A stretch of 64,000 nt of DNA, from positions 62,001-126,000 of IMG/VR virus record IMGVR_UViG_3300028840_005860. The stretch is one strand, 5' to 3'. Positions 10,769 through 49,755 of this stretch are shown here, piece after piece. Position 1 is the stretch's first letter, and every line of letters starts with the position of its first letter. The position numbers and the translations under genes were made by a program. The notes below the pieces were generated by a model that saw nothing but the letters and a program-made list of their open reading frames with translations, made no database searches and was not told the origin of the DNA.

Positions 10769-10790
10769 CTACGTTCCGTTCATCGAAGCG

Positions 10791-31042: not shown

Positions 31043-31467
31043 GTAGCTTGCCGCCGCCTCCGGGCGTCACGCTCATGACCGCAGGTGACGCCCGTCGAGA
31101 ATTCCCGGACAAGGAGATCGGGCCCGCGTTGCCAGCCTGGGGAGGCTCTCCCGCGCTGCCGCCGGCGCCCGACGACTCGTGGTGCTGGGTGCTAGACGCA
31201 GGTGCGGAGGTCAGGTCGCGGTTCAAGACGCGAGAAGAGGCCCTGATGGACTCGTGGAGAACCTTGTGGTGGATCTGCGAGAGCTACGCCTACACGTCGC
31301 CCGAGCAGAAGCGTCAGATGAGGGACGCGAAGATCGCGTTCCTCATGGAGCAGGGTTGGGGGTTCCCGGACGACTACAAGCGGAGGCGGCGCGAGCACGA
31401 TGCGATCGAGAGGTCTCGCCGTCAGTGGATCGAACAGGAGCGGGCTACGGAGTTCACGGGGAAATGA
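31039..31467 (+). CDS. hypothetical protein
   Basis: ORF track. Confidence 0.6.
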   Translation: MSSLPPPPGVTLMTAGDARREFPDKEIGPALPAWGGSPALPPAPDDSWCWVLDAGAEVRSRFKTREEALMDSWRTLWWICESYAYTSPEQKRQMRDAKIAFLMEQGWGFPDDYKRRRREHDAIERSRRQWIEQERATEFTGK

Positions 31468-32297
31468 GAATCTTCCTGGTACGTCACGGGCAGTCGAGGG
31501 CCAACCTCGACTGGGAGGAGAACAGGCGCGTGGCCGACCACGCCATCGCGCTCTCGGAGGAGGGCAGGAAGCAGGCGCGGGCGGCCGGAGACTTCCTGGC
31601 CCGGTACTTCTTCGACCGGCTCACCGTGGGCCAGCCCTGGAGGACGCCGCCGATCCGGCTGTGGCACAGCCCCTACCTGCGGTGTCGGCAGACCGCGGCC
31701 GAGATCGAGGGCGCCTGCCGCCTCCCACTGGTCGACTCCGACTTCGACCACGACGACCGCACAACGTGGCAGATCGGCCCCGTCTACGGCGCGGCCGCGA
31801 ACGAGCCCCGCGTCTACCCCGACCGGCGGGACGGCGACCCGTGGTTCCTCGACGCGCGCGAGCACCTGCTCTTGGCCGAGCAGCAGTTCGGGATCTTCGA
31901 TGGCCTCTCCGACGACGAGCGCCGCGAGCGATACCCCGACATGCAGGCGTACTACGAGAAGTGCAAGAAGTTCGAGGGCAAGCTCTGGCCGAAGATGCCG
32001 CTTGGAGAATCTCGCTTCGAGGTCTGCCAGCGCGTCCACCAGGCGTTCGGCACGTTCCACCGCGACGCCCAGAAGCACGGGATCGAGAACGTCGTGATCG
32101 TCGGACACGGGACGACGAACCGCGCGTTCGTCATGATGTGGCTACACCTGCGGTACGAGTGGATGCACGAGGAACCCAACCCGAGAAACTGCTCCATACG
32201 GCTGCTCGAAGACGGTGAGGACAGGGGGTACATCTTCGAGGGTTTCGAGCACGCCGAGGGGTACAACCACGAGGCCAACCGAGAGACCGAGGAGTAG
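31464..32297 (+). CDS. histidine phosphatase (phosphoglycerate mutase superfamily)
   Basis: MRIFLVRHGQS; SPYLRC.QTA; EQQFG; GES; VGHG; NCS. Confidence 0.9.
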   Translation: MRIFLVRHGQSRANLDWEENRRVADHAIALSEEGRKQARAAGDFLARYFFDRLTVGQPWRTPPIRLWHSPYLRCRQTAAEIEGACRLPLVDSDFDHDDRTTWQIGPVYGAAANEPRVYPDRRDGDPWFLDAREHLLLAEQQFGIFDGLSDDERRERYPDMQAYYEKCKKFEGKLWPKMPLGESRFEVCQRVHQAFGTFHRDAQKHGIENVVIVGHGTTNRAFVMMWLHLRYEWMHEEPNPRNCSIRLLEDGEDRGYIFEGFEHAEGYNHEANRETEE

Positions 32298-34144: not shown

Positions 34145-34219
34145 CGGGCGGTGGCGCAGTCTGGCTAGCGCGCCTGCTTTGGGTGCAGGATGTCGCCGGT
34201 TCGAATCCGGCTCGCCCGA
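34145..34219 (+). tRNA. tRNA-Pro(TGG)
   Basis: Cloverleaf; cctgc-tt tgg gt-gcagg; GTTCGAATC. Confidence 0.9.
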
Positions 34220-34259
34220 CGAACAGAAGGAGCACGTCAAGCGAACGAAGAACACACAC

Positions 34260-34335
34260 GCCCCCGTAGCTCAGCGGAAGAGCATCGGTCTACGGAACCG
34301 AGCTGTCGGGAGTTCGAATCTCTCCGGGGGTGCCA
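34260..34335 (+). tRNA. tRNA-Arg(ACG)
   Basis: tcggt-ct acg ga-accga; encoded CCA. Confidence 0.9.
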
Positions 34336-34340
34336 TGCAC

Positions 34341-34417
34341 GTCCTCCGTAGCTCAATGGACAGAGCGTCCACCCCTGAGGGGTGGGAGGTTGCAGGTTCG
34401 ACTCCCGCGGGAGGGCG
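34341..34417 (+). tRNA. atypical tRNA: Arg-type body with enlarged anticodon arm (6-bp stem, cc TGA gg loop)
   Basis: Acceptor gtcctcc/ggagggc, D and T arms normal; anticodon arm 2 nt too long and lacks U33. Confidence 0.65.
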
Positions 34418-34427
34418 TGCAGCAGCT

Positions 34428-34502
34428 GTTCCCGTAGCTCAGCGGAAGAGCGTCGGTCTCCGGAACCGAAGGACGTGGGTTCGAGTCCCCCCGGGAATGC
34501 CA
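34428..34502 (+). tRNA. tRNA-Arg(CCG)
   Basis: tcggt-ct ccg ga-accga; CCA. Confidence 0.9.
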
Positions 34503-34503
34503 A

Positions 34504-34578
34504 CGGGATGTGGCGCAGTCTGGCTAGCGCGCGTCGTTCGGGTCGACGAGGCCGTGGGTTCAAATCCCACCATCCCGA
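34504..34578 (+). tRNA. tRNA-Pro(CGG)
   Basis: cgtcg-tt cgg gt-cgacg. Confidence 0.9.
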
Positions 34579-34812
34579 CTGAAAGAGAAACCATCATGGC
34601 GGACATCATCACGTGGACGACGCGGAGGCGGCTTTATCCGCATCGTGGAGTGGGCCCGCGAGGGCAGCCACGAGGCCGAGGTGGACGAGTTCCTCGCCCG
34701 GCAGAGGGCCGAGTGCGAGCGAGCTGAACGGAACAACCCCGTCCTGAGGGCGCGACGACGAAAGGAGAAACAACGAGAGAGGGCTGCACGACGCGCAGCC
34801 AAGAAAAAGCAA

Positions 34813-34887
34813 CGGGATATGGCGCAGTCTGGCTAGCGCACTTGACTGGGGGTCAAGGGGCCGCAGGTTCAAATCCTGCTATCCCGA
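34813..34887 (+). tRNA. tRNA-Pro(GGG)
   Basis: cttga-ct ggg gg-tcaag. Confidence 0.9.
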
Positions 34888-34922
34888 CGATGAGCGAGAA
34901 TCACGAAGAGACTACAAGCAAC

Positions 34923-35002
34923 GGATTTAGGGTCCCGTGTATGTCGGTTCGAATCCGGCCCTCGCCACCACGCGGCGAGGTAGGCGAATTGGAACAGCCG
35001 CG
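34923..35002 (+). tRNA. candidate circularly permuted tRNA-Leu(TAG): 3' half 34923-34970, 5' half 34974-35002
   Basis: 3' half ends cctcgcc-A-CCA; downstream 5' half starts ggcgagg with a Leu-type D arm; the joined halves give a perfect cggga/tcccg anticodon stem. Confidence 0.7.
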
Positions 35003-35040
35003 TAGCAACACCCATCCCTTCAACTCTCTCGCTCACAACT

Positions 35041-35116
35041 GCCGCGGTGGCCAAGCTGGTAAAGGCGCCTGATTAAGGATCAGGAGATTTTGTCGGTTCG
35101 ACTCCGACCCGCGGTA
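35041..35116 (+). tRNA. tRNA-Leu(AAG) with short variable region
   Basis: cctga-tt aag ga-tcagg; gccgcgg/ccgcggt; A73. Confidence 0.8.
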
Positions 35117-35145
35117 CAGTGTGCTGATGGAGGACGAAAAACCCC

Positions 35146-35679
35146 ATGAGCACAAAAGTCCCAACCTGCAAGGTGTGTGGAGAGACGGACCCAGCGAAAC
35201 TGGTGAAAATCTCCAGAAATAGACGCCCTTACTACAGAGGATGGTGCGTTCCCTGTTACAGCGCATACCGGAAAGAGTGGAACAGACGAAATCCAGAACG
35301 AGCGAAGGCGACGTGGGCTCGAGCCCACGAGCGTCAGAAGAAGAAACGGAGGCAAGGACAGGACACCGCCCGGTTTATCTGGGTCGATTCACGAAGATCC
35401 GACAAGAAACGAGGATTCAAAAACGACCTGACCAAAGAGTTCATCGCGGAGCAGATCACCAAAGGTTGCTCGTACTGCGGGGAGAAAACGATCCGCATGA
35501 CGCTCGACCGCATCGACAACGAACGAGGACACACGACGGACAACGTCGTGCCCGCGTGCATCCGGTGCAACCACATCCGTGGGAACATGCCCTACGAAGC
35601 ATGGCTCTGTTTTAGGGCAGCGTTGCGGCGGGCGCGACGGGAGGGGTTATTCGGGAACTGGACTGGAAGAACTAGATAA
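35146..35679 (+). mobile_element. free-standing HNH-type homing endonuclease
   Basis: CKVC...CVPC; CSYCGE...LDRIDN..GH...NVVPACIRCN; lower GC; lies between Leu tRNAs. Confidence 0.85.
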
Positions 35680-35764
35680 GCCCAGGTGGCGGAATTGGTA
35701 GACGCGGTCGGTTCAGGACCGGCTGTCTTACGGCGTGCGAGTTCAAATCTCGCCCTGGGCACCA
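35680..35764 (+). tRNA. tRNA-Leu(CAG)
   Basis: gtcgg-tt cag ga-ccggc; long variable arm; CCA. Confidence 0.92.
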
Positions 35765-36070: not shown

Positions 36071-36676
36071 CTAGAGCCGCTCGTACCCGTACCGGTCGAA
36101 CAGGGGGTCGAACCTGGCGTTCACGGCGTCGAGGGACTCTCGGTCGTAGTACTCGCGCCAGGGTCGTTTGTCCGGCGTCACGTTGCTGCGTGGGATCTCC
36201 ACGGGCTCCAGTCCGACGTCCGCCAGCGCCGCGTTCAGGTCGTCGTCGAGGTGCTCGTATCGGAGAACCCGGCTCCCCTGCCTGACGAGGTAGTCGAGCT
36301 CGGCGAAGCGTTGGTCCTCCAGTTCGGTGATGAACGCCGTCAGCGTGGAGAATCCGTACCGGTCCAAGGCCCACCAGGTGGCGACGAGGTCGTAGGGGTT
36401 CCTCATGGTCGACATGACCGTCTCTCGCCTCGTGTAGAGGGAGGGCGGAAGCAGGAACGTCTTCGCGTCTCGCTCTGCCTTGAACAGGGTCTTGAATTCG
36501 TCTCCTCGACGCACCTTCACGAGCCGGAAATCGCCGGCCTCGATCTCGGGGAGCCCGACGTGCTTGTAGTCGAGGACCACGGCGCCCTCGATCTTCTCGA
36601 GAGCCTGGGTGGTCGCGTAACTCGCCGTGTGTGGGGTGCAGAGGTAGAGCAGCTTGCCGGGGAAAAGGACGGCCAC
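36071..36676 (-). CDS. sulfotransferase family 2-like protein
   Basis: LLYLCTPHTASYA (degenerate H.PKTAG 5'-PSB), MRNPYD (3'-PB), RYEHLDDDL. Confidence 0.6.
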   Translation of the reverse strand: MAVLFPGKLLYLCTPHTASYATTQALEKIEGAVVLDYKHVGLPEIEAGDFRLVKVRRGDEFKTLFKAERDAKTFLLPPSLYTRRETVMSTMRNPYDLVATWWALDRYGFSTLTAFITELEDQRFAELDYLVRQGSRVLRYEHLDDDLNAALADVGLEPVEIPRSNVTPDKRPWREYYDRESLDAVNARFDPLFDRYGYERL

Positions 36677-36956
36677 GGCCCATCCTACCCCGCCTGTAAC
36701 GCCGTCGGACTAGAAGGTGGGGGACCCTGTCCGGCCCTCCGACATCCCTCAGGAGACGCCATGACCAGGAAACGAATCGCGCCGCTCAGGTGGATCGTAG
36801 GCGAGAAGAACGACGAGTACGGGAGGATCGTTGAAATCCTCGAGTGCGGCCACGAGCAACCCCGGAAGGAAGACATCTACGGGCCCACGAACGCCCTCAG
36901 GCGGAGATGCCGGAGATGTCTTCAAGAACGTGAGGATTCGACGGAGTAGAAGGGAC

Positions 36957-37502
36957 ATGCGCGTCCTCATCTCCAGCGTGTGCTCGTTCTGGCTCTCTCG
37001 GCAGGCCGTCCTGCGGGCCCGGGAACTGGGCGCTGCATGGGCGGTACCCGAGGAGATCGCCCTGCTCGGGGAGGAGCAGCACCATGAATTCGGTCCCGAC
37101 TGGCGCGACCTCGTGCGCTCGGAGGAGGGCAGGTACAGCCGTTTCCATGGAGACGAGGAGGAGTTCCTCCGCTGGGAGGACTGCCACTACAACCTCCCGA
37201 GCGAGGTGCCGCGCCACGATCCCGTCCTGCTTCAAGTCTTCGACGAGATGGGCGGGGAGGCGATGGAGGGCTCGATGCGCGAGCATCCCGATGACCCGCC
37301 CGAGTATGAGGACCGGATCGAGTGCGTCGAGGTCCCCGACGACGTGACCTACTCCATCGAGAGCTACCTCGGGGAATGGGTTGCGGAACGGCACCGAGTG
37401 TGGTCTACTGACGACGGCCCCGAGGGACACCTCCCGGGCTGGCAGTACTTCACGAAGGACAGCACCTACCAACCCCGGCGAAAGGAGAGCAGCGATGGAT
37501 GA
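36957..37502 (+). CDS. conserved phage hypothetical protein
   Basis: RHDPVLLQVFDEMG...VEVPDDV.YSIE.Y.GEWVAERHRVW pattern common in large phages. Confidence 0.7.
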   Translation: MRVLISSVCSFWLSRQAVLRARELGAAWAVPEEIALLGEEQHHEFGPDWRDLVRSEEGRYSRFHGDEEEFLRWEDCHYNLPSEVPRHDPVLLQVFDEMGGEAMEGSMREHPDDPPEYEDRIECVEVPDDVTYSIESYLGEWVAERHRVWSTDDGPEGHLPGWQYFTKDSTYQPRRKESSDG

Positions 37503-37537: not shown

Positions 37538-37611
37538 CCGCAGGGGACCCGAGTAGGTCGGGTACGGGGTTGTAAACTCCGCGGTAGCAGGTTCGACTCC
37601 TGTCCTGCGGT
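37538..37611 (+). tRNA. atypical tRNA-Tyr(GTA): short variable loop, C1:G72, U73, no U8
   Basis: ccgcagg/cctgcgg; accc/gggt D stem; cgggg-tt gta aa-ctccg; gcagg-ttcgact-cctgt. Confidence 0.7.
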
Positions 37612-37615
37612 CGAA

Positions 37616-37697: not shown

Positions 37698-37784
37698 CGG
37701 TGGGTATGCAAGAGGCTAAAGCAATCGGACTGTAAATCCGCCGCGCACCGCGCTTCGGAGGTTCAAATCCTCCCCCACCGGCCA
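37698..37784 (+). tRNA. tRNA-Tyr(GTA), long variable arm, C1:G72, G73
   Basis: cggtggg/cccaccg; cgga-ct gta aa-tccg; CCA. Confidence 0.8.
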
Positions 37785-37836
37785 CGCCCTTCGCGGGCTG
37801 ACGGCTCGGAAAGACGAGTAGAAACGAGAAGGAACC

Positions 37837-39003
37837 ATGACGAAGGAGCACATGAACGTAGGCACGATCGGCCACGTCGATCACGGAAAGACCACCCTCA
37901 CGGCGGCGATCACGAAGCTCGCGGCCGCCCTGCATGGCGGGGAGGCCAAGGACTTCGATCAGATCGACAACGCGAAGGAGGAGCGCGAGCGTGGCGTCAC
38001 GATCAACGCGTCTCACGTGGAGTACGAGTCCGCGCGGCGCCACTACGCCCACATCGACTGCCCCGGGCACGCCGACTACATCAAGAACATGATCGTCGGC
38101 GCGTCCCAGATGGAGGGTGCGATCCTGCTGGTGGACGCCTCCCAGGGGCCGCAGAAGCAGACGGTGGAGCACGTCCTCCTGGCGAACCAGGTCGGCGTCT
38201 CGAGCGTCGTGGTCTTCGTGAACAAGGTGGACGTGGCCGATCCCGACCTCCTCGAGCTCGTCGAGGTCGAGGTCGCGGAGCAGCTGGAGCGCTTCGGTTA
38301 CGCACCCGTCTTCGTGCGGGGATCAGCCCTCAAGGCCCTTCAGGCCCTGGAGACTGGGGACGCGGAGTCCGAGGACGTCGCCTGCATCCGCGAGCTCCTC
38401 GACGCCATGGACGCCCACTTCAAAGCTCCCGACCGGGACATGGACTCTCCGTTCCTGCTCCCGATCGAGCACGTCTACACGATCCCAGGCCGGGGCACCG
38501 TCGTGACCGGCCGCGTCGAGCGCGGCCGCGTCAGGGTCGGCGACAGGGTCGAGATCGCCGGTCGCCGGGATGATGGCCGGGAGGTCGTGGTCACCGGCAC
38601 GCAGGCGTTCCACCGGGACATCCCGGAGGCCCACGCGGGCCTGAACGTCGGCCTGCTCCTGCGGGGCGTCGCTCGAGACGAGGTCGAGCGCGGCCAGGTG
38701 ATCGTGGCGCCGGGCTCTATCCGGTCGCACACCTCGGGGAGCGCCGAGATCTTCGTGCTCACGAAGGAGGAGGGCGGACGTCACACGCCGTTCGGCAGCG
38801 GCTACACCCCGCAGCTGTTCTTCGGGGCCTCGGACGTGTCCGCGACCCTGAGGACCGACGAGGACGCGGCCGTCGAGCCCGGCGACAGGGCGACCGTCGC
38901 GTTCACCCTCGACAAGCCGACCGCCTTCGAGCCCGGGATGCGCTTCGCCATCCGCGAGGGCGGGAAGACGGTGGGTGCCGGCGTCGTGCTCGACGCGGGC
39001 TAG
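37837..39003 (+). CDS. tuf: elongation factor Tu (divergent)
   Basis: [18 protein letters not shown]; ERERGVTI; [15 protein letters not shown]; NKVD; GSALKAL; [14 protein letters not shown]; [13 protein letters not shown]. Confidence 0.95.
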
Positions 39004-39042: not shown

Positions 39043-39114
39043 CCCTCTCTCGTGGCCGGACGCGGGGACCGTTTGAGGGCAGGCGCTTTTCGCGTAGAAT
39101 GGACGGCTGCCCTC

Positions 39115-39582
39115 ATGTCACGGGATCCACGAAAGACGTTCTGGTTCCGGGTGGCCCGGAACGTCGACAACCCCCCGATCCCGGGCCAGTGCCACTACGT
39201 GTACCCCGACGGCCGCTCCCGTTGCGGGCAGGCGCTCTCCGAGAAGCACGGCGACGGTAAGTGGTGCTGGGCCCACAGGGGCGTGCGTCCCGACGGCAGG
39301 CGGTGCACGGGCCCGAGAGGTACGCCCGAAAAGCAGACCATGGATGCCAAAGCAGAAATCAAGCTTCAGTATCGCGTTCGCAAGATCCAGAACGAGCGCG
39401 TGCTCAGGCACCTCACCGACGCGGCCCACGCCGTCTCGCCGTGTCCCGACGACAGCAGCGTGCGCCCCGACTACGTCGAACTCGCATCGGGCTTCCGGGC
39501 GGAGCGCAAGCGGTGGCCTCTCTGGTGGGAGATGGCGAAGGCGATCCAGGAGGACGGAACACGCGGAGACCGAGGGGGCTGA
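39115..39582 (+). CDS. Cys/His zinc-finger protein (paralog of 39853..40557)
   Basis: GQCHYVY...RC...KHGDGKWCWAH. Confidence 0.7.
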   Translation: MSRDPRKTFWFRVARNVDNPPIPGQCHYVYPDGRSRCGQALSEKHGDGKWCWAHRGVRPDGRRCTGPRGTPEKQTMDAKAEIKLQYRVRKIQNERVLRHLTDAAHAVSPCPDDSSVRPDYVELASGFRAERKRWPLWWEMAKAIQEDGTRGDRGG

Positions 39583-39583
39583 C

Positions 39584-39856
39584 ATGGACGCGAACAAGCT
39601 CAAGGTGCTCCAGGAAATTGGGTACACGATCGTGCCCTCCTGTGCGACGTGTCAGCACTCCGACCTCTCGAGGGACGGGTGGGGCTACTGCAACGCCCAC
39701 GAGTACGAGCACCTCAAGCACAGCGAGGAGACGAGTCGGCTGAGCGTGCATCAGCTCGGGCACTGCGACTCGTGGATTCGTGATGCGTACAAGGTCGCCG
39801 CCCTTGGTCTGCATGCGTTCAAGAGTTTTTGCACGGGCACGACAGAAGAACCATGA
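39584..39856 (+). CDS. Cys-rich hypothetical protein
   Basis: CATCQH...YC...HC. Confidence 0.6.
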   Translation: MDANKLKVLQEIGYTIVPSCATCQHSDLSRDGWGYCNAHEYEHLKHSEETSRLSVHQLGHCDSWIRDAYKVAALGLHAFKSFCTGTTEEP

Positions 39857-40557
39857 CTCGAACATTCCGGTTTCGGACAACTCGAAGCGTGCAGCAAGGG
39901 CCCCCAATTGAGGGGCAGTGCCATTACATGTACGAGAGCGGCGTCCGGTGTTCCCAAGCGGCCTCGAAGAAGCACGGTGACGGCGAATGGTGCTGGTCTC
40001 ATCGGATTCTGAACGCGGATGGTACTCGGGGCGCTGGCCCACGACGCAAAAGGAAGGGCATGAAGCCGAAGAACAACAACTCTCGGTCGATCGAGAAAGC
40101 GAAGGATCAGTACGATCCCGACCACTGGGCCTACGACATGCGCCGCTGCCCGATGGCGGGATGTCTCGGCGTAGTGGACGACGAGTTGCATCCCCCGAGG
40201 TGCTGTGCCTGCGAGACGAAACTGCCGGACGGCCCCGGAGTGATGGCCCTCCCTGCTCCGTCAGGGCGGAAGTTCCAGAACGAGTGGCGCCGCAGTCCTC
40301 CTGACCGCCGTCCTCCGAACGTCATGTCGCTCGAGCGGTGTCCGTTCTGCGGTGCTAGGGAGGTCGAGACCGACATGGGCCCGCACCGGTTCGTGATCAT
40401 GCACGACGGCCGGAAGTGGTCCGACAGGCTCCGCTATCCGGCTTTCCATTGCCTCTCCTGCGACCAGGGCTGGACCGATCACCGGGCCGAGAGCGTCCGG
40501 GACGACGCGGCCAGGAGGGGTCGGGCCAAGATGACGCAGGACGAGGTGTTCCCGTGA
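39853..40557 (+). CDS. multi-zinc-finger protein
   Basis: GQCHYMY...RC...KHGDGEWCWSH; CPMAGC; CPFCG; CLSC. Confidence 0.7.
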   Translation: MTRTFRFRTTRSVQQGPPIEGQCHYMYESGVRCSQAASKKHGDGEWCWSHRILNADGTRGAGPRRKRKGMKPKNNNSRSIEKAKDQYDPDHWAYDMRRCPMAGCLGVVDDELHPPRCCACETKLPDGPGVMALPAPSGRKFQNEWRRSPPDRRPPNVMSLERCPFCGAREVETDMGPHRFVIMHDGRKWSDRLRYPAFHCLSCDQGWTDHRAESVRDDAARRGRAKMTQDEVFP

Positions 40558-41030
40558 ACGAGCGTTCCGACAAGCCGCCCAGGGGTTACATGCCCTTCCT
40601 CGTGGAGTACCAGTGCGAGTGCAGGTGGGCCTGCGCGACGCCGCACTGCGACTCCGCCGAGGACCTCGTGTACGAGGTCGAGGACGACGAGACCTTCGAA
40701 CGGATCGACATCCTGGAGTGGAGGGGGGAAATTCACGATCAGCGAGAAAGGATCCTGCGCCTGTTCGAGACCCGCGAGGGGGCGGTCGAGGCGTGCTGGA
40801 ACCACGCGCGCAGGTGGTGGGACGGCGAGCCCCCGGCCGTTCCCGGGATTCCCGACTACGACGTGCTTCCGGACGGATACGCGATCTTCGTGGAGGTCGA
40901 GCAGCGCCGCGTGTGGCTGCGATACCCGGACGGCAACACCTGGGGGGGAGTTCAGCGGGATCAGCCTGTCCTCGGGCCTCCGCTCCTACGAGGCCGACGC
41001 CCGAGCCCACGCCGAGAAAGTCCTCGGTAG
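40554..41030 (+). CDS. hypothetical protein
   Basis: GTGA overlap. Confidence 0.55.
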   Translation: MNERSDKPPRGYMPFLVEYQCECRWACATPHCDSAEDLVYEVEDDETFERIDILEWRGEIHDQRERILRLFETREGAVEACWNHARRWWDGEPPAVPGIPDYDVLPDGYAIFVEVEQRRVWLRYPDGNTWGGVQRDQPVLGPPLLRGRRPSPRRESPR

Positions 41031-41033
41031 TGG

Positions 41034-41336
41034 TTGATCGTGCGCGGCATCACCGTGAACCTGCCGCCGGGGTGGAGGAGCAGCGATCCCGGGCTCCCCG
41101 AGATGCTGCCCGTAGCGCCCGACGAGCGCGAGGGCTACGAGGGCGTGGCGTGGCGGGCCACGAAGGGGTCCTGGCAGCTCGAGGTCCGGTGGCGAGGGGA
41201 CCATGGTCTGTTCGTCTGCCGGGCGGTCAAGGATGGGGCCGAGGAGAATCCGATGGAGCACCGGACCTTCCCATATCCGCACGAGGTGGTCGAGTGGTTG
41301 GGAATCTGGTTCGCCCAGCTCGTCAAGGCCCGCTAG
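41034..41336 (+). CDS. hypothetical protein
   Basis: ORF track. Confidence 0.6.
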   Translation: MIVRGITVNLPPGWRSSDPGLPEMLPVAPDEREGYEGVAWRATKGSWQLEVRWRGDHGLFVCRAVKDGAEENPMEHRTFPYPHEVVEWLGIWFAQLVKAR

Positions 41337-41589: not shown

Positions 41590-41666
41590 GCGTGCGTAGC
41601 CCAAATGGTAGAGGCGCTGGCTTCAAATCCCAGGAGTTGGAGGTTCGAGTCCTCCCGCGCGCACCA
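41590..41666 (+). tRNA. tRNA-Leu(CAA) with short variable loop
   Basis: ctggc-tt caa at-cccag (C31:C39 mismatch); 5-nt variable loop; A73, CCA. Confidence 0.75.
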
Positions 41667-41667
41667 C

Positions 41668-41748
41668 GGCCCCGTGGCGGAAATGGTCTACGCGGCGGAC
41701 TTAAACTCCGCGCCTCCGGGCGTCTCGGTTCGAATCCGAGCGGGGCCA
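41668..41748 (+). tRNA. tRNA-Leu(TAA)
   Basis: gcgga-ct taa ac-tccgc; long variable arm. Confidence 0.9.
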
Positions 41749-41749
41749 C

Positions 41750-41908
41750 CTAGTCGGCGGAGAACCAGTTGCCCTGGCTGTCCTGGAGCACCCTGCGGCC
41801 GCACACGCCGCACCGGCTGCTGAACGAGCATCCGTCGAAGTCGAGCCGAGCTCCGCGACCGTCGTGCCAGCCGAGCACGTCGTGGGCGAACCACCGCAGG
41901 AACCGCAT
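41750..41908 (-). CDS. small Cys-containing protein
   Basis: MRFLRWFAHDVLGWH...CGVCG. Confidence 0.5.
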   Translation of the reverse strand: MRFLRWFAHDVLGWHDGRGARLDFDGCSFSSRCGVCGRRVLQDSQGNWFSAD

Positions 41909-43080
41909 CACTCGTCGTCTCCGTGAAAGAGGATCCTGTCCTCGGTGGTCTCGACCTTCCAGTCGGCGGCCATCTTGGGGGTCTTCGTCTCGATGCGCTG
42001 GACCGAGACCTTTAGGCCGTCGCCGTCTCCTTCGGTGACGACGGGCTTCGTCCTCTCGTGAACCGCGTAGCCGAAGTCGGGAACCATGAAGTCCCCCTCC
42101 TGGTACGAGTAGAACAGGCCGTCCTGCATGCGGAACCTCCGCACCCTCTCGGGCATGAAGAGTCCGGCTAGGGTCCGCGTCGCGGGTCGCTTCTCCTTGT
42201 AGTCCACGACGGCGACGTTGGTCGGAAAGTTCTGCACGTACCGCGGGCCCTCCGGCTGGACGCGGAACAGGTCGGGGAGCCAGCCCGAGATCTCCGTCTG
42301 ACTGCCTGAGCCGCAGCGTTCGAGGCTGAACATGGCGCGCCACCAGGTAGCATCGACGAGGCGAGCGACGCACTCGTCGAGAGTCCGCTGCACGCGCTCC
42401 ATCCAGGGGGCCGCGGCGCCGAACAGCGGCACGAGCTTGCGCCACTGTGCGGCGACGAGATGCCAGTCGTCGCGCGTGCCCTGGACCGAGATCGCCGGGA
42501 ACCCGCACGCGTACATGCCGTACTCGTAGTAGGGCGAGCACAGGTCGCAGAACGAGGCGTACATGGCGTGTCGCGACCGCTCGGAGGTGGTCGAGAACTG
42601 CGGCAGGAACAGGCTCGCTTCCGTCGGGACGGCCCCCCGGAGGGCCTGCACGAGCCGGTTCAGGGGCATCACGATCTCCTCCGCGGCCTCGACCCAGATC
42701 TCCTGTTTCTCGTGGCTCCTCGTGAACAGGTGCCGGTACGGTTCGGGGCTCTCCTTGACGACGCCGACGAGCTCGGAGAGGACCGTGAACCACAGGACGT
42801 CGGGCGTGATCACGATGCCCAGGTGGTCGGCCCAGCACTTCTCGAGGTACTCGAGGTAGTTCCGATGGTAGATCGAGCCGTCCTTGGGCATCCCGACGTG
42901 ACGCAGGAACAGGCTCTGCGTCGTGGCACCAGTGCGCCAGTCCTTCTCGCGGTCGTGTAGCCGGTCGAGGAATGCGTCGCAGGGGTCGAGGTCTTCGGCC
43001 TGGCTCGTCTCGTTGTTGAACGAGCGTGGGACGCGCGGAGTCCCCACCTTCACGTCGGACAGCTTGAACTCGGTCGTCAT
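41908..43080 (-). CDS. DUF4419 family protein
   Basis: H..LVITPD.LW..VL; FSTT; YYEY....CGFPAI.V.GT.DDW. Confidence 0.8.
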   Translation of the reverse strand: MTTEFKLSDVKVGTPRVPRSFNNETSQAEDLDPCDAFLDRLHDREKDWRTGATTQSLFLRHVGMPKDGSIYHRNYLEYLEKCWADHLGIVITPDVLWFTVLSELVGVVKESPEPYRHLFTRSHEKQEIWVEAAEEIVMPLNRLVQALRGAVPTEASLFLPQFSTTSERSRHAMYASFCDLCSPYYEYGMYACGFPAISVQGTRDDWHLVAAQWRKLVPLFGAAAPWMERVQRTLDECVARLVDATWWRAMFSLERCGSGSQTEISGWLPDLFRVQPEGPRYVQNFPTNVAVVDYKEKRPATRTLAGLFMPERVRRFRMQDGLFYSYQEGDFMVPDFGYAVHERTKPVVTEGDGDGLKVSVQRIETKTPKMAADWKVETTEDRILFHGDDE

Positions 43081-43091
43081 GGTCTCCTCCT

Positions 43092-43529
43092 CTATACCCC
43101 CTCGGAGGCCCAAGGGCAGCCCACGAGGGCGAAGGAGGGGTCGACGGCCCTCCCGCCCCGACGCACCTCCAGGTGCAGGTGAGGGCCCGTGGTGCGTCCT
43201 GAGCGGCCCATGTGGCCTATCTGATCCGCAGCCTCGACGCGCTGCCCGACGTGGACGGCAACGTCCTTCAGGTGAGCGAACATGACTCGGAGTCGCGCGG
43301 TGCGCATCACGACGTAGAGCCCGGCCCTCCGGGTTCGACGGATTTTCACGATGCGCCCAGGCCAGGGCGCGAGAACCTCCGTGCCGCGGGCATTGGCGAT
43401 GTCGACGCCGCCGTGCATGCGCCACCGACCCGTCACGGGATGCTGGCGTCGTCCGAATTCGGAGGAGACCCATCCGTCAGTCGGACAGACCGGCCAGACC
43501 TTGAGGAGGATCAGGAGCAGAACCACCAC
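43092..43529 (-). CDS. M23 family metallopeptidase
   Basis: SS.FG.R.HPV...HGGVDIA...; FAHL; G.TTGPHLHLEV. Confidence 0.9.
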   Translation of the reverse strand: MVVLLLILLKVWPVCPTDGWVSSEFGRRQHPVTGRWRMHGGVDIANARGTEVLAPWPGRIVKIRRTRRAGLYVVMRTARLRVMFAHLKDVAVHVGQRVEAADQIGHMGRSGRTTGPHLHLEVRRGGRAVDPSFALVGCPWASEGV

Positions 43530-43532
43530 GCC

Positions 43533-43964
43533 CTAGGGGGCAAGTATCGGAAGATCTTGGAGAGTGCGGGTGATGTCGAGCCAGTGGGTCTCGGCGTCGA
43601 ATCCTGCCTTGTCGTCGAGGAGGAGGTTGAAGTAGATCTTCCGGTCGTAGCAGCCGTAGCCCTCGCTTGCGACTTCGGGGTTCTCGTTGACGTAGTCGAA
43701 CTTGATCCCGTCGGCGCCGAACTTCTGAAGGTACGCCTCGACCTCCTTCGGCCACGAGCACGTGTACATGATGAGGACGACGTCGGGACGTTCCGACAAC
43801 ATGCGCATCGCCTCCAACGCGTGCGGATAGTAGTCGACCGGAAGCTCGTCGTCCCGGTAGTTCGGACGGATCAACGTCTCGTGGAGGTCCACGGCCCAGT
43901 ACGTGCGGTCCCACTTGCGGGCCACGGCGATCTTGAACTGCTTACGAATGGCTTGGGCGATCAC
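43533..43964 (-). CDS. HAD-superfamily (BT0820-like) protein
   Basis: AVDLHETLI motif I variant; MYTC; NENP; LLDDKA. Confidence 0.7.
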   Translation of the reverse strand: MIAQAIRKQFKIAVARKWDRTYWAVDLHETLIRPNYRDDELPVDYYPHALEAMRMLSERPDVVLIMYTCSWPKEVEAYLQKFGADGIKFDYVNENPEVASEGYGCYDRKIYFNLLLDDKAGFDAETHWLDITRTLQDLPILAP

Positions 43965-44711
43965 GCGGAACTCCTCTCATCTCCTGCACGGACTTCGGGA
44001 AGATTTTACACGCGCATGTCGCGCAGGCGCCTGGCCCGGTTACCGACGCGTGCGGTGAAGCCCGTAGGAGGTGGCCCAACCCGAGCCGGCTGCGAACGCG
44101 GTGAAGAGGAGCCAGTCGCGGACGTCCTCGAAACCGAGGCAGAGGCCCGCGAAGGCCCACAGCAGGACGAAGGGAACGGACATGAGAACGCGAAACTCCA
44201 TCCCTACTCTCCCTGGGCCGTCCTCGCTAGCTTGCGAACTCTCTGAAGGAACTCGTCTCCAAACCACACCACCTCCAGGGTGTTGCCGTGGCCCCGATCG
44301 ACGATCCAGATGCAGATCTGTTCCCACTCGTCGGCGTCTTCGGGATCGGTGTAGACGGTGACGACGATTTTGCCGTGAGTTTCCAGGTCTCGTTTCCAGG
44401 CCCACAGCAAGTCGTTCGTGGGGAGATTGTCAGGCCCGACTACCTCGGTGTAGAAGTCACCCATGCCGAGTTCGACTCGCTCCAAGCCGAGCTTGCGGAT
44501 CAACCCCGCGAGTGCTTCGCATCCCGCGTCGCGGATGTGTTCCCACCGACCCGTCCAGCGTTCGGCGTACAGGATCTCGTGGTTCCTGGGGCGCCTCACG
44601 GCGTGGCACGTCTCCTGAGCTGGGAGAGTCGCTCGTAGGTCGCTCTGGAGATGACCCATGACGGCACCTGACCGTCTTCGTGGTCGTAAGCCATGACGAT
44701 GACGCGCCTGG

Positions 44712-45585: not shown

Positions 45586-46836
45586 TTGGATGAGGTCTTG
45601 GAGCGGCGTTTACCGAAGGATCGCCCCGGTTCTTTTGTCGGCCGTCGCTTCGGTAAACTTGTCGTGATTGCGGAGTTCGCGGGCAAGAAGTATGCGTTTG
45701 CTCCGCAGTGTCTGTGTCGGTGTGACTGCGGGAAAGAGCACTGGGTCGTTCGGGGCAACCTCGTGCGTACAAAGAGCTGTGGGTGTGGACGCCGTCCCAA
45801 TCTCGTGGGACGTAGGTTTGGAAACCTCGTTGTCGGGCGCCCCATGCCGCGCAGAACAAAGTCGGGACGCAAGCAGACGGCCTACGCTTGTCGCTGTGAC
45901 TGCGGAAAGGAGACGACCGTGTATCCCGGCGCGTTGCGGTCTGGAGAGACGGTCAGCTGTGGTTGCGTGCGAGAGATGCGATGGGCAGCTTCTCGGATTC
46001 CTACCGGGCGGCGGTTCGGTCGCCTTGAAGTGCTGGAACGTGTGCGCCGGGACGGACATCCCGGGTGGTTCTATCGATGTCGCTGTGACTGTGGAAAACA
46101 GACTATCGTCGACGGCGTCGCGCTGAAGAGAGGCGCCACGCGGAGCTGCGGGTGTCTTCGAGACGAGGTCGCTAGCCTTCCTGACGGAGAGGCCATGCGT
46201 AACGCGATCTTTTCGGGATACCGCAAGAACGCCCGAAAGAGGAACCTGCGGTTTGAGTTGGGCTTGGAGGAGGCTGGGTCTTTGTTTCAGGGGACCTGTC
46301 ACTACTGTGGCAGCCCTCCTCAGATGCGTAGCCATGCAACGGTGCGTGGAGGATACGCGGCGAACGGGATTGATCGTCCTGATAACTCCTCGGGTTACAT
46401 TCCGGGAAACATGGTTTCGTGCTGCACGATCTGTAACTTGGCAAAGGGCACGAAATCCGTGGAAGGTTTCCTGCGATGGGTTCGTCGTGTCGCGTATTTC
46501 GCGGCGACGTCGCCCATTCTCGTGCACGGAAAGCGCGAGACAGCGAAAGACCGACGCAGATTGTCGAAATACAAGGAAGGCGCTCGTGGGCGACGACTTG
46601 CCTTTGAGCTGACAGACGACCTTGCGATCGTGCTCCTGCATTCGCCCTGCACGTACTGTGGTCGGATGCCTGGTAACGGAATCGATAGGATCGATAACTC
46701 GAGAGGTTACGAGCCCGACAACGTTGTGCCATGCTGCGCGGTCTGCAATCGGGCGAAGATCTCGCTTTCCGTAGAGTGCTTCTTCGCTTGGGCTCGGCGT
46801 CTCGTAGCGCATCAGACGGAGATCTCCAACAGATAG
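45586..46836 (+). mobile_element. homing endonuclease with four G.RFG.L.V...C.CDCG repeats and two tandem HNH-like domains
   Basis: Repeats visible in the translation; CHYCG...GIDRPDN..GY...N.V.CC.ICN and CTYCG...GIDRIDN..GY...NVVPCC.VCN; lower GC; antisense to its neighbours. Confidence 0.85.
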
Positions 46837-48623: not shown

Positions 48624-49391
48624 ATGGCGGATCGCTGCCCAGAATGCTCGAACGTATTGCCCGACCACGCGAGCTGGTGTTCACGTTTCCCTGACGGCGT
48701 GCCGCATCCCGACGGTTTCGGAGGGTCCGACGAGGAGTCGCATTACATGTCACAGAAGCGCATCACGACCAAGGAAGAATTCGAGGCCGAGTACGGCGAC
48801 TTCGATCCGTCTCGCGAGCCCACGTTACTTCGCGAGCGTCTGGACGGTTCTCTTGCCCGCGTGATGTCGGAACGTCGAGGTCCGTCCAAGCTGGACGAGA
48901 TGATCGAGGCCGAGCGGGCCGTAGTGGGTCCCACCCCGGAGCAGGAGGCCGCGATGAAACGCGATGTGGAGCAACAGCTCGGGCCGAAACAGGTCCTCGT
49001 GGTGCGCACCGACCTCCAGATGCGCAAGGGCAAAATGGTCTCGCAGGGGGCTCACGCGAGCGGCAAGGTCTTCTTCGACACCATCCCCCGCGAGGCGCTT
49101 GAGGTCGGGTTCCCCGAAGGCTTCGAGCGCGTCAGGGTGACTCTCGAGCTGGACAGGTCGATGTTCATGTGGCTCGCCGGCATCTTCACGAAAATCTGTT
49201 GCCGCGTCGACTCCGAGGACGAGCTCCTCGAGATCTACGAGAAGGCCACGACGGCCGGGCTCCCGTGCGTCCTCATCGAGGACAGGGGCCTCACCGAGTT
49301 CGGCGGCGTCCCGACCAAGACGTGCTGCGCCATCGGGCCGGCACCGCCCGAGGAGGTCGACCCCATCACCGGACACCTCAAATTGCTGTAG
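48624..49391 (+). CDS. pth2: peptidyl-tRNA hydrolase, Pth2 type, with N-terminal extension
   Basis: KQVLVVRTDL.M.KGK...QGAHAS; KI...V.SE.EL; I.D.G.TE...T.TCCAIGP...EVD.ITG.LKLL. Confidence 0.9.
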   Translation: MADRCPECSNVLPDHASWCSRFPDGVPHPDGFGGSDEESHYMSQKRITTKEEFEAEYGDFDPSREPTLLRERLDGSLARVMSERRGPSKLDEMIEAERAVVGPTPEQEAAMKRDVEQQLGPKQVLVVRTDLQMRKGKMVSQGAHASGKVFFDTIPREALEVGFPEGFERVRVTLELDRSMFMWLAGIFTKICCRVDSEDELLEIYEKATTAGLPCVLIEDRGLTEFGGVPTKTCCAIGPAPPEEVDPITGHLKLL

Positions 49392-49401
49392 GAACGAAAC
49401 C

Positions 49402-49743: not shown

Positions 49744-49755
49744 TCGAATCTGGCT

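What the first reader, a model, noticed from the sequence alone, without database searches (positions are those of the whole stretch)
37837..39003. Divergent phage EF-Tu co-located with tRNAs
All GTPase motifs are intact, but the N-terminal KEKFER segment is missing, the conserved T in KNMITG is V, and the domain 3 loops are shortened. It may be resistant to host EF-Tu-targeting defences (Lit cleavage, Doc phosphorylation) or tuned for non-canonical tRNAs (inference).
Basis: partly seen in the sequence, partly recalled or inferred. Interest (0 to 1): 0.6.

Follow-up and report, generated by a model that had tools for sequence, protein, structure and literature searches.

The report
Accessory EF-Tu inside jumbo-phage tRNA array
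A 230-kb marine phage carries an intact but unusual copy of the protein that delivers charged tRNAs to the ribosome, placed inside its own tRNA gene array; it belongs to a distinct EF-Tu subfamily shared between related huge phages and marine myxobacteria, and its odd features come with that subfamily rather than being anti-defence changes made in this phage.

Summary
The ORF at 37837..39003 (+, 388 aa) is a real, intact EF-Tu homologue in a 230-kb jumbo phage that has a terminase, a portal and 36 tRNAs. All five G motifs are intact. The "shortened domain 3 loops" claim fails: the net loss there is one residue.

These traits are not specific to this phage. The protein belongs to a well-supported "short-N" EF-Tu clade (100/100). 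That clade sits inside tRNA arrays of related huge phages, and also occurs as a stand-alone third EF-Tu in about half of the Nannocystaceae genomes sampled.

The phage allele, with its 89% twin, lies within clades that contain bacterial stand-alone copies.

The Doc target T382 and most kirromycin sites are unchanged. The Lit site differs only by I60V.

The subfamily does change residues that are invariant in ordinary EF-Tu: E259Q, R333G, D109Q, M112Q, and the aminoacyl-pocket residues D216 and F218.

Most likely it acts as an extra aminoacyl-tRNA carrier expressed together with the phage tRNAs. Phage EF-Tu was already reported in 2020. I found no description of this subfamily or of the tRNA-Tyr–EF-Tu module.

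The parts
37837..39003 (+). EF-Tu homologue of the short-N subfamily, 388 aa. G domain aa 3-196, domain 2 aa 220-289, domain 3 aa 294-385.
   Evidence: It is the only PF00009 GTPase in the 230-kb genome. Identical contigs occur in three metagenome runs.
37826..37833 (+). Purine-rich Shine-Dalgarno-like stretch (GAGAAGGA), 3 nt before the ATG.
   Evidence: Read directly from the sequence. Its role is inferred.
37698..37784 (+). tRNA-Tyr(GUA), class II, 87 nt, ending 52 nt before the EF-Tu start. It is the partner in the conserved tRNA-Tyr–EF-Tu module.
   Evidence: ARAGORN; Rfam tRNA 48.2 bits. The same adjacency is seen in phage loci L002/L025 and L019 and in bacterial loci L121, L122, L125, L128, L131 and L133. 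It is 79% identical to the L002 tRNA-Tyr.
37538..37612 (+). Second, short (75 nt, class-I-shaped) tRNA-Tyr(GUA)-like gene. Weak score; it may be degenerate.
   Evidence: ARAGORN. Rfam 29.8 bits against a gathering score of 29.
34145..35764 (+). Upstream block of the tRNA array: Pro(UGG), Arg(ACG), Ser(UGA)-like, Arg(CCG), Pro(CGG), Pro(GGG), Leu(AAG), Leu(CAG).
   Evidence: The same order is found beside EF-Tu in related huge phages L019 and L002/L025.
41590..41750 (+). Downstream tRNA-Leu(CAA) and tRNA-Leu(UAA), closing the conserved Tyr–EF-Tu–Leu–Leu order.
37990..38001 (+). Switch I R52-G53-V54-T55, equivalent to E. coli R58-G59-I60-T61. This is the Lit cleavage site (G59/I60, from my own knowledge). 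I60V is shared with P0002.
38095..38097 (+). V87, equivalent to E. coli T93 in KNMITG.
   Evidence: Contigs of other organisms laid here read ACx (Thr).
38470..38478 (+). Aminoacyl-pocket residues H212-V213-Y214, equivalent to E. coli D216-V217-F218.
   Evidence: The role of these residues in the pocket is described in PMC6386890 and PMC4150793.
38602..38607 (+). Q256-A257, equivalent to E. coli E259-M260. Both are invariant in 89 canonical sequences.
38824..38829 (+). G330-A331, equivalent to E. coli R333-T334. G at 333 is found in 98% of short-N sequences.
38968..38970 (+). T378, equivalent to E. coli T382, the Doc phosphorylation target. Retained.

Best explanation
The gene encodes an intact and probably working EF-Tu-type GTPase of a separate accessory subfamily, here called short-N EF-Tu.

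In this 230-kb phage from marine sediment it holds a fixed position just after tRNA-Tyr inside a long tRNA array. Related huge phages keep the same layout.

The most likely role is as an extra carrier for aminoacyl-tRNA, made together with the phage's 36 tRNAs. That would keep supply of ternary complexes (EF-Tu·GTP·aa-tRNA) in step with the added tRNAs and keep elongation going during infection. It would have to use the host ribosome and the host EF-Ts, because these phages encode no EF-Ts.

The allele is of the type that marine myxobacteria (Nannocystaceae) keep as a stand-alone third EF-Tu, and the phage and host copies have been exchanged repeatedly. The N-terminal truncation, E259Q, R333G and the remodelled aminoacyl pocket came with the subfamily; T93V is a trait of one subclade that includes bacterial copies.

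Shown: family membership, intact motifs, the phage genome, the array layout, the phylogenetic position.
Inferred: expression, activity, dosage role, host.
For: Family and motifs.

Phage genome: terminase, portal and clamp loader; 36 tRNAs.

Array layout: the order Pro-Arg-(Arg)-Pro-Pro-Leu-Leu-Tyr-EFTu-Leu-Leu is shared with L019 and L002/L025. Most of the viral short-N loci examined carry 9-30 tRNAs in 13 kb on the same strand.

One phage lineage: the terminase of this phage is 68% identical to G348, 52% to G346/G349, 49% to G353 and 43% to G355.

Tree: the short-N clade is separated from canonical EF-Tu at 100/100. The query plus P0002 (100/99) lie inside the 10-, 30- and 57-row clades, which contain bacterial copies.

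Bacterial contexts of the nearest relatives are ordinary chromosome. No terminase of this phage lineage was found in five of those genomes.

Distribution: 20 of 41 genomes sampled from the family of G001 carry the short-N copy beside two canonical tuf genes. In a sample across the phylum only 3 of 151 do.

Repeated exchange: holding the related phages' EF-Tu as one clade is rejected, p-AU 4.7e-71. L019 is 80.8% identical to the Enhygromyxa copy but 72% or less to the other phage copies. tRNA-Tyr types travel with EF-Tu.

No EF-Ts in five phages of the lineage, with a positive control in 10 bacteria.

The gene is intact and identical in three metagenome runs from three studies.

Literature: Al-Shayeb et al. 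2020 (PMC7162821) proposed that EF-G, EF-Tu and EF-Ts encoded by huge phages maintain translation efficiency.
Against: - There are no expression data. No RNA run holds the region.
- No promoter or terminator stood out above chance.
- The score is below the TIGR00485 equivalog cut-off.
- Residues invariant in ordinary EF-Tu are changed in the aminoacyl/A76 pocket and at the three-domain junction. General aa-tRNA delivery may therefore be impaired or narrowed.
- Streptomyces EF-Tu3, another accessory EF-Tu, is reported to be less active than EF-Tu1 (PMC12309360).
- Short-N copies diverge faster than canonical ones within the same bacterial family: median identity 68% against 82%. That fits relaxed or shifted constraint.
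- The direction of phage-host transfer is unresolved. Placing the query outside its 28 nearest relatives is only weakly rejected, p = 0.03, and that test was chosen after seeing the tree.
Confidence: 0.6

Rival explanations
1. Replacement EF-Tu for counter-defence. The phage copy keeps translation running when a host abortive-infection system cleaves or modifies the housekeeping EF-Tu (Lit-like protease, type IV Thoeris, Doc-like kinase), because it escapes recognition.
For: EF-Tu is a known target of defence systems: Lit and type IV Thoeris cleave it (PMC13581612). I60V, the residue just after the Lit cut, is shared by the query and its probably phage-borne twin P0002, but occurs in only 1% of bacterial short-N copies. 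At least 12 other phage EF-Tu genes (L006, L007, L010, L014-L018, L020-L023) replace the whole RGITI switch-I stretch with KTVTI/KQVTI inside a different motif.
Against: In this protein R58, G59, T61 and I62 are unchanged, and V60 occurs in 6% of ordinary EF-Tu. Doc target T382 is retained. The striking traits (short N-terminus, T93V/I, R333G, E259Q) are also found in bacterial chromosomal copies. No Lit- or Doc-like system was looked for or shown in the presumed hosts.
Confidence: 0.13
2. Specialised carrier. The remodelled aminoacyl pocket makes this EF-Tu favour a subset of aminoacyl-tRNAs that ordinary EF-Tu binds poorly (bulky, acidic or modified amino acids, or particular phage tRNAs). 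The array plus the factor would then form a partly separate elongation channel.
For: D216 and F218 are 98% and 97% conserved in canonical EF-Tu. In the short-N clade they are G/N/H/S and H/Y/C; in the query they are H and Y. These positions line the amino-acid pocket. D217A/G and F219Y/G (numbering that counts the initial Met) are the changes used in engineered EF-Sep and EF-pY and in variants that accept bulky amino acids (PMC6386890; PMC4150793). E259Q and M260A next to the A76 site are clade-wide. A second, canonical-N phage lineage (L020-L021) also has the G-V-H pocket. The array holds class-I-shaped tRNAs with Leu anticodons.
Against: H66, E215, T228 and N273 and all the tRNA-body contacts checked are retained. 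Several basal short-N members keep D-V-F, so the pocket change does not define the clade. No aminoacyl-tRNA synthetase or aa-tRNA-modifying enzyme was found among about 50 phage proteins scanned. A tRNA-Tyr upstream also occurs in ordinary tufB operons (L116).
Confidence: 0.15
3. Inhibitor-insensitive accessory EF-Tu, like Streptomyces EF-Tu3. It would have evolved in antibiotic-rich myxobacterial settings and been picked up by the phage with no phage-specific role.
For: R333G (98% of the clade) and T334A fall on positions where, from my own knowledge, E. coli pulvomycin-resistance mutations map (R333C, T334A). Y160, a kirromycin-resistance position, is Q/F/H in the clade. Streptomyces tuf3 is a stress-induced EF-Tu resistant to GE2270A (PMC12309360 and PMC7157823). 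One bacterial copy lies next to extra CysRS and ThrRS genes (L147).
Against: The other kirromycin sites (120, 124, 316, 329, 375, 378) and the GE2270A sites (226, 257, 275) are wild type. The gene keeps its place in a tRNA array across a phage lineage whose terminases are only 43-68% identical. That argues for a use in the phage itself.
Confidence: 0.08
4. Passenger gene, or a role outside translation such as a structural or chaperone partner of phage proteins.
For: EF-Tu is used outside translation by other phages and defence systems: Qβ replicase, T4 major capsid binding, the Avs7 scaffold (PMC13581612; PMC13157829). GC3 of 0.93 is at the 93rd percentile of phage genes, which would fit recent import.
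Against: All catalytic and nucleotide-binding motifs and the tRNA contacts are kept. There are no stops or frameshifts in any of the phage copies. The slot in the array is conserved.
Confidence: 0.04

Closest known systems
Housekeeping bacterial EF-Tu (TufA/TufB; TIGR00485, PRK00049)
   Same: Three-domain architecture. G1-G5 motifs, H84, V20 of the V20/I60 hydrophobic gate (I60 itself is V here) and the tRNA-body contacts are kept. It is 55-59% identical to canonical EF-Tu. A tRNA-Tyr upstream recalls the tufB operon.
   Different: Seven N-terminal residues are missing. A 3-residue loop at 163-165 is deleted. Positions invariant in canonical EF-Tu are changed: A96S, V104L, D109Q, M112Q, E259Q, M260A, R333G, T334A, D216H, F218Y. 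It scores below the equivalog cut-off. It does not lie in a str or tufB operon. It is encoded by a phage.
Translation factors encoded by huge phages (Al-Shayeb et al. 2020, PMC7162821)
   Same: An EF-Tu encoded by a phage of more than 200 kb that carries many tRNAs. The proposed role, keeping elongation efficient, is the same.
   Different: The passages of that paper retrieved here list EF-G, EF-Tu and EF-Ts among genes found. In those passages I saw no description of a separate EF-Tu subfamily, its position in tRNA arrays, the tRNA-Tyr linkage or exchange with myxobacterial secondary copies. This phage has no EF-Ts and no other GTP_EFTU-family (PF00009) translational GTPase.
Streptomyces EF-Tu3 (tuf3)
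   Same: A non-essential, divergent extra EF-Tu kept beside the housekeeping copy, linked to translation stress and inhibitor resistance.
   Different: I had no sequence to compare, so whether tuf3 belongs to the short-N clade was not tested. From memory, tuf3 keeps a full-length N-terminus. A sample of 301 genomes from one actinobacterial class held only canonical copies at 55-59% identity.
Engineered EF-Tu variants EF-Sep, EF-pY and D216A
   Same: The same pocket positions are changed (D216 and F218 in mature numbering). EF-Sep carries D→G and F→Y; the query carries D→H and F→Y; many clade members carry D→G.
   Different: These are natural variants. H66, E215, T228 and N273 stay wild type, whereas the engineered factors change them too. 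No substrate is known.
[quoted passage not shown]
   Same: Long, same-strand, non-periodic tRNA arrays with embedded protein genes and homing-endonuclease neighbours, shared between bacteria and phages. In Anabaena the array is induced by translational stress. L110 shows 37 tRNAs, a short-N EF-Tu and an HNH-like gene in a 9.4-Mb bacterial chromosome.
   Different: EF-Tu appears in that paper only in its reference list, so I saw no report of an EF-Tu gene embedded in an L-array.
SelB and other specialised EF-Tu paralogues (nematode mitochondrial EF-Tu1/2)
   Same: EF-Tu relatives whose aminoacyl pocket or tRNA interface is altered for particular substrates.
   Different: No extra domains. Much closer to EF-Tu: the SelB model scores 165 bits against a cut-off of 242. 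There is no evidence for a single dedicated substrate.

Membership tests
EF-Tu (translational GTPase, bacterial type) | GTP_EFTU domain followed by domains 2 and 3 | tested here: met
   Pfam PF00009 5e-56, PF03144 4e-17, PF03143 1e-24. Solved EF-Tu structures E = 3e-142 over residues 2-385.
EF-Tu (translational GTPase, bacterial type) | Intact G1-G5 motifs, catalytic H84, Mg-binding T25 and T61 | tested here: met
   All are identical to the canonical consensus.
EF-Tu (translational GTPase, bacterial type) | Score above curated family cut-offs | tested here: inconclusive
   Subfamily models are passed: PRK00049 534.9 > 449; PRK12735 519.1 > 479. The equivalog model TIGR00485 is missed: 509.5 < 522.4.
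EF-Tu (translational GTPase, bacterial type) | Conserved N-terminal segment (S/A)KEKF(E/V/D)R | tested here: not met
   Residues 2-8 are absent and the upstream frame closes after 5 codons.
EF-Tu (translational GTPase, bacterial type) | Canonical pocket for the aminoacyl group and A76 (H66, E215, D216, F218, T228, E259, N273) | tested here: not met
   H66, E215, T228 and N273 are kept. D216H, F218Y and E259Q are changed.
EF-Tu (translational GTPase, bacterial type) | GTP-dependent delivery of aa-tRNA to the ribosome, with nucleotide exchange by EF-Ts | not testable with these tools
   The complex prediction with a Nannocystaceae EF-Ts gave no verdict.
Short-N accessory EF-Tu clade (defined here) | Branches inside the clade that is separated from canonical EF-Tu | tested here: met
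   The split has 100/100 support. The query lies in nested clades supported at 100/93, 100/99 and 97/95.
Short-N accessory EF-Tu clade (defined here) | Signature states: truncated N-terminus, V104L, D109Q, M112Q, deletion at 163-165, E259Q, R333G | tested here: met
   The query has all of them. Their frequencies in the clade are 82-100%. Caveat: the 164 sequences are mostly top hits to this query, so the sample is biased.
Phage-encoded translation factor of huge phages | Encoded on a genuine phage genome | tested here: met
   Terminase large subunit, portal, clamp loader and ExoV/Dda helicase. The record is an IMG/VR virus record of 230,069 bp, about 90% complete.
Lit-resistant EF-Tu | Altered cleavage site R58-G59/I60 | tested here: inconclusive
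   R58 and G59 are kept; I60V. The effect of V on cleavage is not known to me.
Doc-resistant EF-Tu | Loss of the phospho-acceptor T382 | tested here: not met
   T is retained in GGKTVGAG.
Kirromycin-resistant EF-Tu | Substitution at 120, 124, 160, 316, 329, 375 or 378 | tested here: inconclusive
   Only Y160F is changed; the other six are wild type. The resistance alleles I know of at 160 are D/N/C (my own knowledge).
Streptomyces EF-Tu3 type | Groups with tuf3 in a tree | not tested
   No tuf3 sequence could be fetched. The paper PMC1855904 is not held. The class-level genome sample did not reach Streptomyces.

The most novel reading that the evidence does not exclude
The short-N EF-Tu and the tRNA array may together form a mobile, partly self-contained elongation module that moves between huge phages and marine myxobacteria. 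Its factor would have a widened, less acidic aminoacyl pocket, and in sister phages a replaced switch I. It could then either serve aminoacyl-tRNAs that host EF-Tu handles poorly, or keep working after the host's EF-Tu has been disabled. The disabling could come from a host defence or from the phage's own enzymes; the phage encodes a PARP-like ADP-ribosyltransferase domain and an ADP-ribosylglycohydrolase. That would amount to a natural orthogonal elongation factor.
Probability: 0.15. Interest if true: 0.8.

Novelty: new variant of a known kind. Interest (0 to 1): 0.5.

Why it matters
EF-Tu is among the most conserved and least transferable proteins known. Here a separate EF-Tu lineage changes residues that are invariant elsewhere, sits in tRNA arrays of one huge-phage lineage, and has been swapped repeatedly with a bacterial family.

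If it is active, it gives three things:
- a natural example of how the amino-acid pocket of EF-Tu can be reshaped, at the same positions that synthetic biologists mutate;
- a concrete model in which phages supply tRNAs and their carrier as one unit;
- a marker linking these uncultured huge phages to marine Nannocystaceae hosts.

If it is only a spare copy, it still shows that the "odd" features in a phage gene can simply be inherited from an overlooked host paralogue.

Tried and rejected
- Megablast of the 5-kb region against deposited phages found no match.
- tblastn of the protein against deposited phages gave only hits under 60% identity. These lie in records named as bacterial assemblies, in unannotated short records that look like host EF-Tu, or in host flank of a prophage record (Moraxella Mcat7, unannotated tuf before attL/integrase).
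- PHROGs has no full-length EF-Tu family. Only the G domain matches, to a 604-position elongation-factor family.
- Protein atlas search returned only generic EF-Tu clusters.
- Complex prediction of phage EF-Tu with a Nannocystaceae EF-Ts: no verdict, score 0.32 against a mark of 0.34. This is not evidence either way.
- I tried to place Streptomyces EF-Tu3. The key paper is not held. The question stays open.
- The promoter and terminator scan found nothing above the shuffled expectation near the gene.
- Sequencing runs: only DNA contigs, identical to the window. The many "other letters" over 37880-38170 come from other organisms' EF-Tu laid at 85% likeness. There is no population variation and no RNA.
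- Pfam and PHROGs on the immediate neighbours (36071-37502, 39052-41336) gave no informative hits.
- Prophage origin of the bacterial copies: the terminase of this phage lineage was not found in five genomes that carry them.
- Reading the shared ECF-sigma plus Ser/Thr-kinase-TPR neighbours of three bacterial copies as strict synteny: the proteins align over their full length but only at 30-45% identity. This is suggestive only.
- The AU test for the query being nested rather than sister to its 28 nearest relatives gave p = 0.03, chosen after seeing the tree. I treat it as weak.
Full report
**What is there.** The window is bases 62001-126000 of a 230,069-bp IMG/VR virus record, about 90% complete and 65.7% G+C. 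PHROGs scans find a terminase large subunit, a portal protein, a clamp loader and an ExoV/Dda-type helicase. ARAGORN finds 36 tRNA genes, 28 of them in the window. It is therefore a jumbo phage.

The ORF at 37837..39003 (+) encodes 388 residues.
- It has the three EF-Tu Pfam domains.
- NCBIfam places it above the cut-offs of the EF-Tu subfamily models, but just below the equivalog model TIGR00485 (509.5 against 522.4).
- It matches solved EF-Tu structures over its whole length at E = 3e-142.
- It is the only GTP_EFTU-domain gene in the phage.
- Identical contigs occur in sediment and seawater metagenomes from three studies. No RNA run holds it.

I aligned the protein with a Salmonella TufA, which has the same numbering as E. 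coli. It came from a record in the phage collection that is really bacterial DNA. I also aligned 89 canonical and 164 related sequences.
- All G motifs, H84, T25 and T61 are intact.
- Mature residues 2-8 (KEKFERT) are missing. Only five codons are open upstream of the ATG, so the gene cannot start earlier.
- T93 of KNMITG is V, whereas T is found in 100% of the canonical set.
- "Domain 3 loops shortened" does not hold. Domain 3 is shorter by a net one residue at 344-346, plus the last residue. The sizeable indels are in domain 1.
- Co-location with tRNAs holds. A class II tRNA-Tyr ends 52 nt upstream, a weak Tyr-like tRNA lies before it, eight tRNAs lie 2-3.7 kb upstream and two tRNA-Leu 2.6 kb downstream, all on the same strand.

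**Where the protein belongs.** The word-index protein search returned a graded series of short (381-399 aa) EF-Tu proteins. One is 89% identical (P0002, on a 15-kb contig of mostly unannotated genes). Many lie at 65-79%, and the named ones come from Nannocystaceae, Enhygromyxa, Paraliomyxa, other Myxococcota and a few Alphaproteobacteria.

The contigs of P0003 (79%), P0007 (77%), P0013 (75%), P0092 (Paraliomyxa) and P0029 (a 9.4-Mb chromosome) show ordinary bacterial neighbours and no ribosomal-protein operon.

I searched 41 genomes of the family of a Nannocystaceae MAG.
- Twenty carry one copy at 65-73% identity to the phage protein.
- Canonical tuf genes at 56-59% were also found in these genomes, where both are assembled typically as a pair about 17 kb apart.
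- In a sample across the whole phylum only 3 of 151 genomes have the divergent type.
- In 301 genomes of an actinobacterial class none does.

The upstream translations show that all these divergent copies, and most EF-Tu genes on IMG/VR contigs, share the truncated N-terminus.

**Phylogeny.** A quick tree and a careful IQ-TREE tree (LG+C20+F+G4 by PMSF) both split canonical EF-Tu from a "short-N" clade, at 100 (SH-aLRT) and 100/100 respectively. With the canonical sequences as outgroup, the earliest short-N branches are mostly viral contigs: L026 with L008, then L005, then a pure clade of ten. The bacterial copies and a few phage copies branch further in.

The query pairs with P0002 (100/99). 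The pair lies inside three nested clades:
- a 10-row clade (97/95) with copies from bacterial contexts (L111, L147);
- a 30-row clade (100/99);
- a 57-row clade (100/93) that holds the Nannocystaceae copies.

Forcing the query pair outside its 28 nearest relatives is only weakly rejected (p-AU 0.03, chosen after seeing the tree). Not all 28 are verified as bacterial.

**A conserved phage module.** In most IMG/VR loci with a short-N EF-Tu, the gene lies inside a dense, same-strand tRNA array of 9-30 tRNAs per 13 kb. The local order in this phage is Pro(UGG), Arg(ACG), Arg(CCG), Pro(CGG), Pro(GGG), Leu, Leu, Tyr, EF-Tu, Leu(CAA), Leu(UAA). It recurs in L019 (a 618-kb record) and in L002/L025 (372 and 497 kb).

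The terminase of this phage is 68% identical to that of the 618-kb record, 52% to the 372/497-kb records, 49% to G353 and 43% to a complete 436-kb genome with terminal repeats. One lineage of huge phages thus carries the array with EF-Tu in a fixed slot. None of five such phages encodes EF-Ts, while the control search found it in all ten bacteria.

**Exchange with hosts.** Although the phages are related and the slot is conserved, their EF-Tu sequences do not form a clade (p-AU 4.7e-71).
- L019 is 80.8% identical to the Enhygromyxa copy but at most 72% to the other phage copies.
- Six bacterial copies have a tRNA-Tyr(GUA) 37-104 nt upstream.
- These tRNAs resemble the phage array tRNA-Tyr types rather than the tRNA-Tyr of a canonical tufB operon. 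The L019 tRNA-Tyr matches the Enhygromyxa-type one. The query's matches L002 (79%) and L131 (74%).
- tRNA-Tyr plus EF-Tu therefore behaves as a two-gene module that has moved between these phages and Nannocystaceae more than once.
- The bacterial copies are not inside prophages of this lineage, as far as a terminase search of five genomes shows.

The direction of transfer is unresolved.
- For an old phage residence and phage-to-host donation: the early viral branches and the phage-type tRNA-Tyr beside bacterial copies.
- For capture from the host, or allele replacement by recombination, in this particular phage: its nesting among chromosomal copies that have similar ECF-sigma and kinase neighbours. 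That synteny is weak, at 30-45% identity.
- The gene's GC3 of 0.93, at the 93rd percentile of phage genes, fits either recent import or high expression.

**What is changed in the protein.** Changes found across the clade at positions that are at least 98% conserved in canonical EF-Tu:
- loss of the N-terminal segment;
- A96S, V104L, D109Q, M112Q;
- a 3-residue deletion at 163-165;
- E259Q, M260A, R333G;
- less uniformly, T334A, F304G, F323G and G339A.

The amino-acid pocket residues D216 and F218 are variable in the clade (G/N/H/S/D and H/Y/C/F). They are H and Y in the query and in P0002. These are the positions that line the pocket and that were mutated to make EF-Tu accept bulky or negatively charged amino acids: D→A/G and F→Y/G in the D216A, EF-Sep and EF-pY variants (PMC6386890; PMC4150793).

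All residues I checked that contact the tRNA body or its 5' phosphate are kept (Y87, K89, N90, R288, R318, H319, Q329, E378; T338 is S).

Within the same bacterial family the short-N copies are 68% identical to each other, against 82% for the housekeeping copies. The subfamily evolves faster.

**The defence hypothesis.**
- Doc's target T382 is present.
- At the Lit site R58-G59/I60, only I60 is changed, to V. I60 is also one half of the V20/I60 hydrophobic gate (my own knowledge).
- V60 is rare in bacterial short-N copies (1%) but is shared by the query and P0002. This is a weak hint, not evidence.
- Kirromycin and GE2270A positions are wild type apart from Y160F.
- R333G and T334A coincide with positions I recall as pulvomycin-resistance sites in E. 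coli. I could not confirm the exact residues in the held literature.

Another group of phage EF-Tu genes has a stronger candidate for a defence-evading variant. In L006, L007, L010 and L014-L018, and separately in L020-L023 (which keep canonical states at 109, 112, 259 and 333), the whole switch-I stretch is replaced by a motif of the form AKGGxVRDxxKxVT. That removes R58-G59. The window's gene does not have this.

**Most likely function.** EF-Tu and aa-tRNA act in roughly one-to-one complexes (my own knowledge). A phage that adds 36 tRNA genes therefore has a simple reason to bring the carrier along and place it in the same array. The factor must fit the host ribosome and the host EF-Ts, which would explain why its alleles track the hosts' own short-N copy. 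This agrees with the proposal made for huge phages in general (PMC7162821).

I give this reading 0.6 confidence. The specialised-carrier, counter-defence, inhibitor-insensitive and passenger readings share the rest. No part of the activity is shown. Expression, GTPase cycling and substrate range all need experiments.

**Novelty.** EF-Tu encoded by huge phages was reported in 2020, so the kind is known. PHROGs has no full-length EF-Tu family, and deposited phage genomes gave only host-derived hits. In the held literature I found no description of the following:
- the short-N subfamily;
- its fixed place in phage tRNA arrays;
- the tRNA-Tyr–EF-Tu module;
- its exchange with Nannocystaceae;
- the natural remodelling of pocket positions 216 and 218.

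I rate it a new variant of a known kind, with interest 0.5.

Noticed in passing
L006, L007, L010, L014-L018 and L020-L023 (IMG/VR loci), EF-Tu residues equivalent to E. coli 50-62: Two separate phage EF-Tu lineages replace the switch-I stretch DNAPEEKARGITI with a longer motif of the form AKGGxVRDxxKxVT. This removes the R58-G59 Lit site. All but L022/L023 also have the pocket G-V-H in place of D-V-F. This is either convergence or partial recombination.
   Followed up: partly
L110 (9.4-Mb bacterial chromosome, ENA), about 2600-9400: A short-N EF-Tu sits inside a run of 37 tRNA genes in about 7 kb, followed by a gene with a faint HNH hit. It looks like a horizontally spread long tRNA array (L-array) with an embedded elongation factor.
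   Followed up: partly
window 35041-35117 and 41590-41666; 34341-34417 and 37538-37612: tRNAs with Leu anticodons (AAG, CAA) that lack the long variable arm yet score well (58 and 52 bits). A short Ser(UGA)-like and a short Tyr(GUA)-like tRNA score barely above threshold (31.7 and 29.8 bits). Their charging identity is unknown.
   Followed up: partly
window 46815-48455 (-); G000 129329-130594 (-); G000 138032-139093 (-): A PARP-domain protein, an ADP-ribosylglycohydrolase and an NAD synthase-like protein. Together they form a set of NAD/ADP-ribose genes in the phage. From my own knowledge, T4 ModB ADP-ribosylates EF-Tu; no link to the EF-Tu gene is shown here.
   Followed up: no
G000 42837-44432 (-): A fusion of DpdA and a 6-pyruvoyl-tetrahydropterin synthase (QueD-like) domain, suggesting 7-deazaguanine modification of the phage DNA.
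   Followed up: no
window 57184-58068 (-) and 31179-32294 (+): An HAD domain of the 'Swiss Army Knife' RNA-repair type and a histidine-phosphatase domain protein. These are possible tRNA or RNA repair functions near the tRNA arrays.
   Followed up: no
window 39052-39582 (+) and 39829-40557 (+): Two ORFs just downstream of EF-Tu share a Cys/His-rich motif (GQCHY..(5 or 6)..C..A.S.KHGDG.WCW.HR). Neither hits Pfam or PHROGs. The second was not picked by my GC3-based gene call.
   Followed up: partly
L147 (JGI contig, 73 kb) 5604-11167: A bacterial short-N EF-Tu lies next to CysRS and ThrRS genes. This may be a cluster of spare translation genes.
   Followed up: no
G000 48780-49751 (-), 175940-177235 (+), 147226-148794 (+): A DruA-like protein, a RecA homologue, and a protein whose C-terminus matches the fusellovirus VP2 capsid family.
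   Followed up: no
window about 38070-38094: Metagenome contigs of two runs break inside the most conserved part of the EF-Tu gene (DCPGHADY region). Many foreign EF-Tu fragments pile up there. This is an assembly hazard for this gene, not a feature of the phage.
   Followed up: yes
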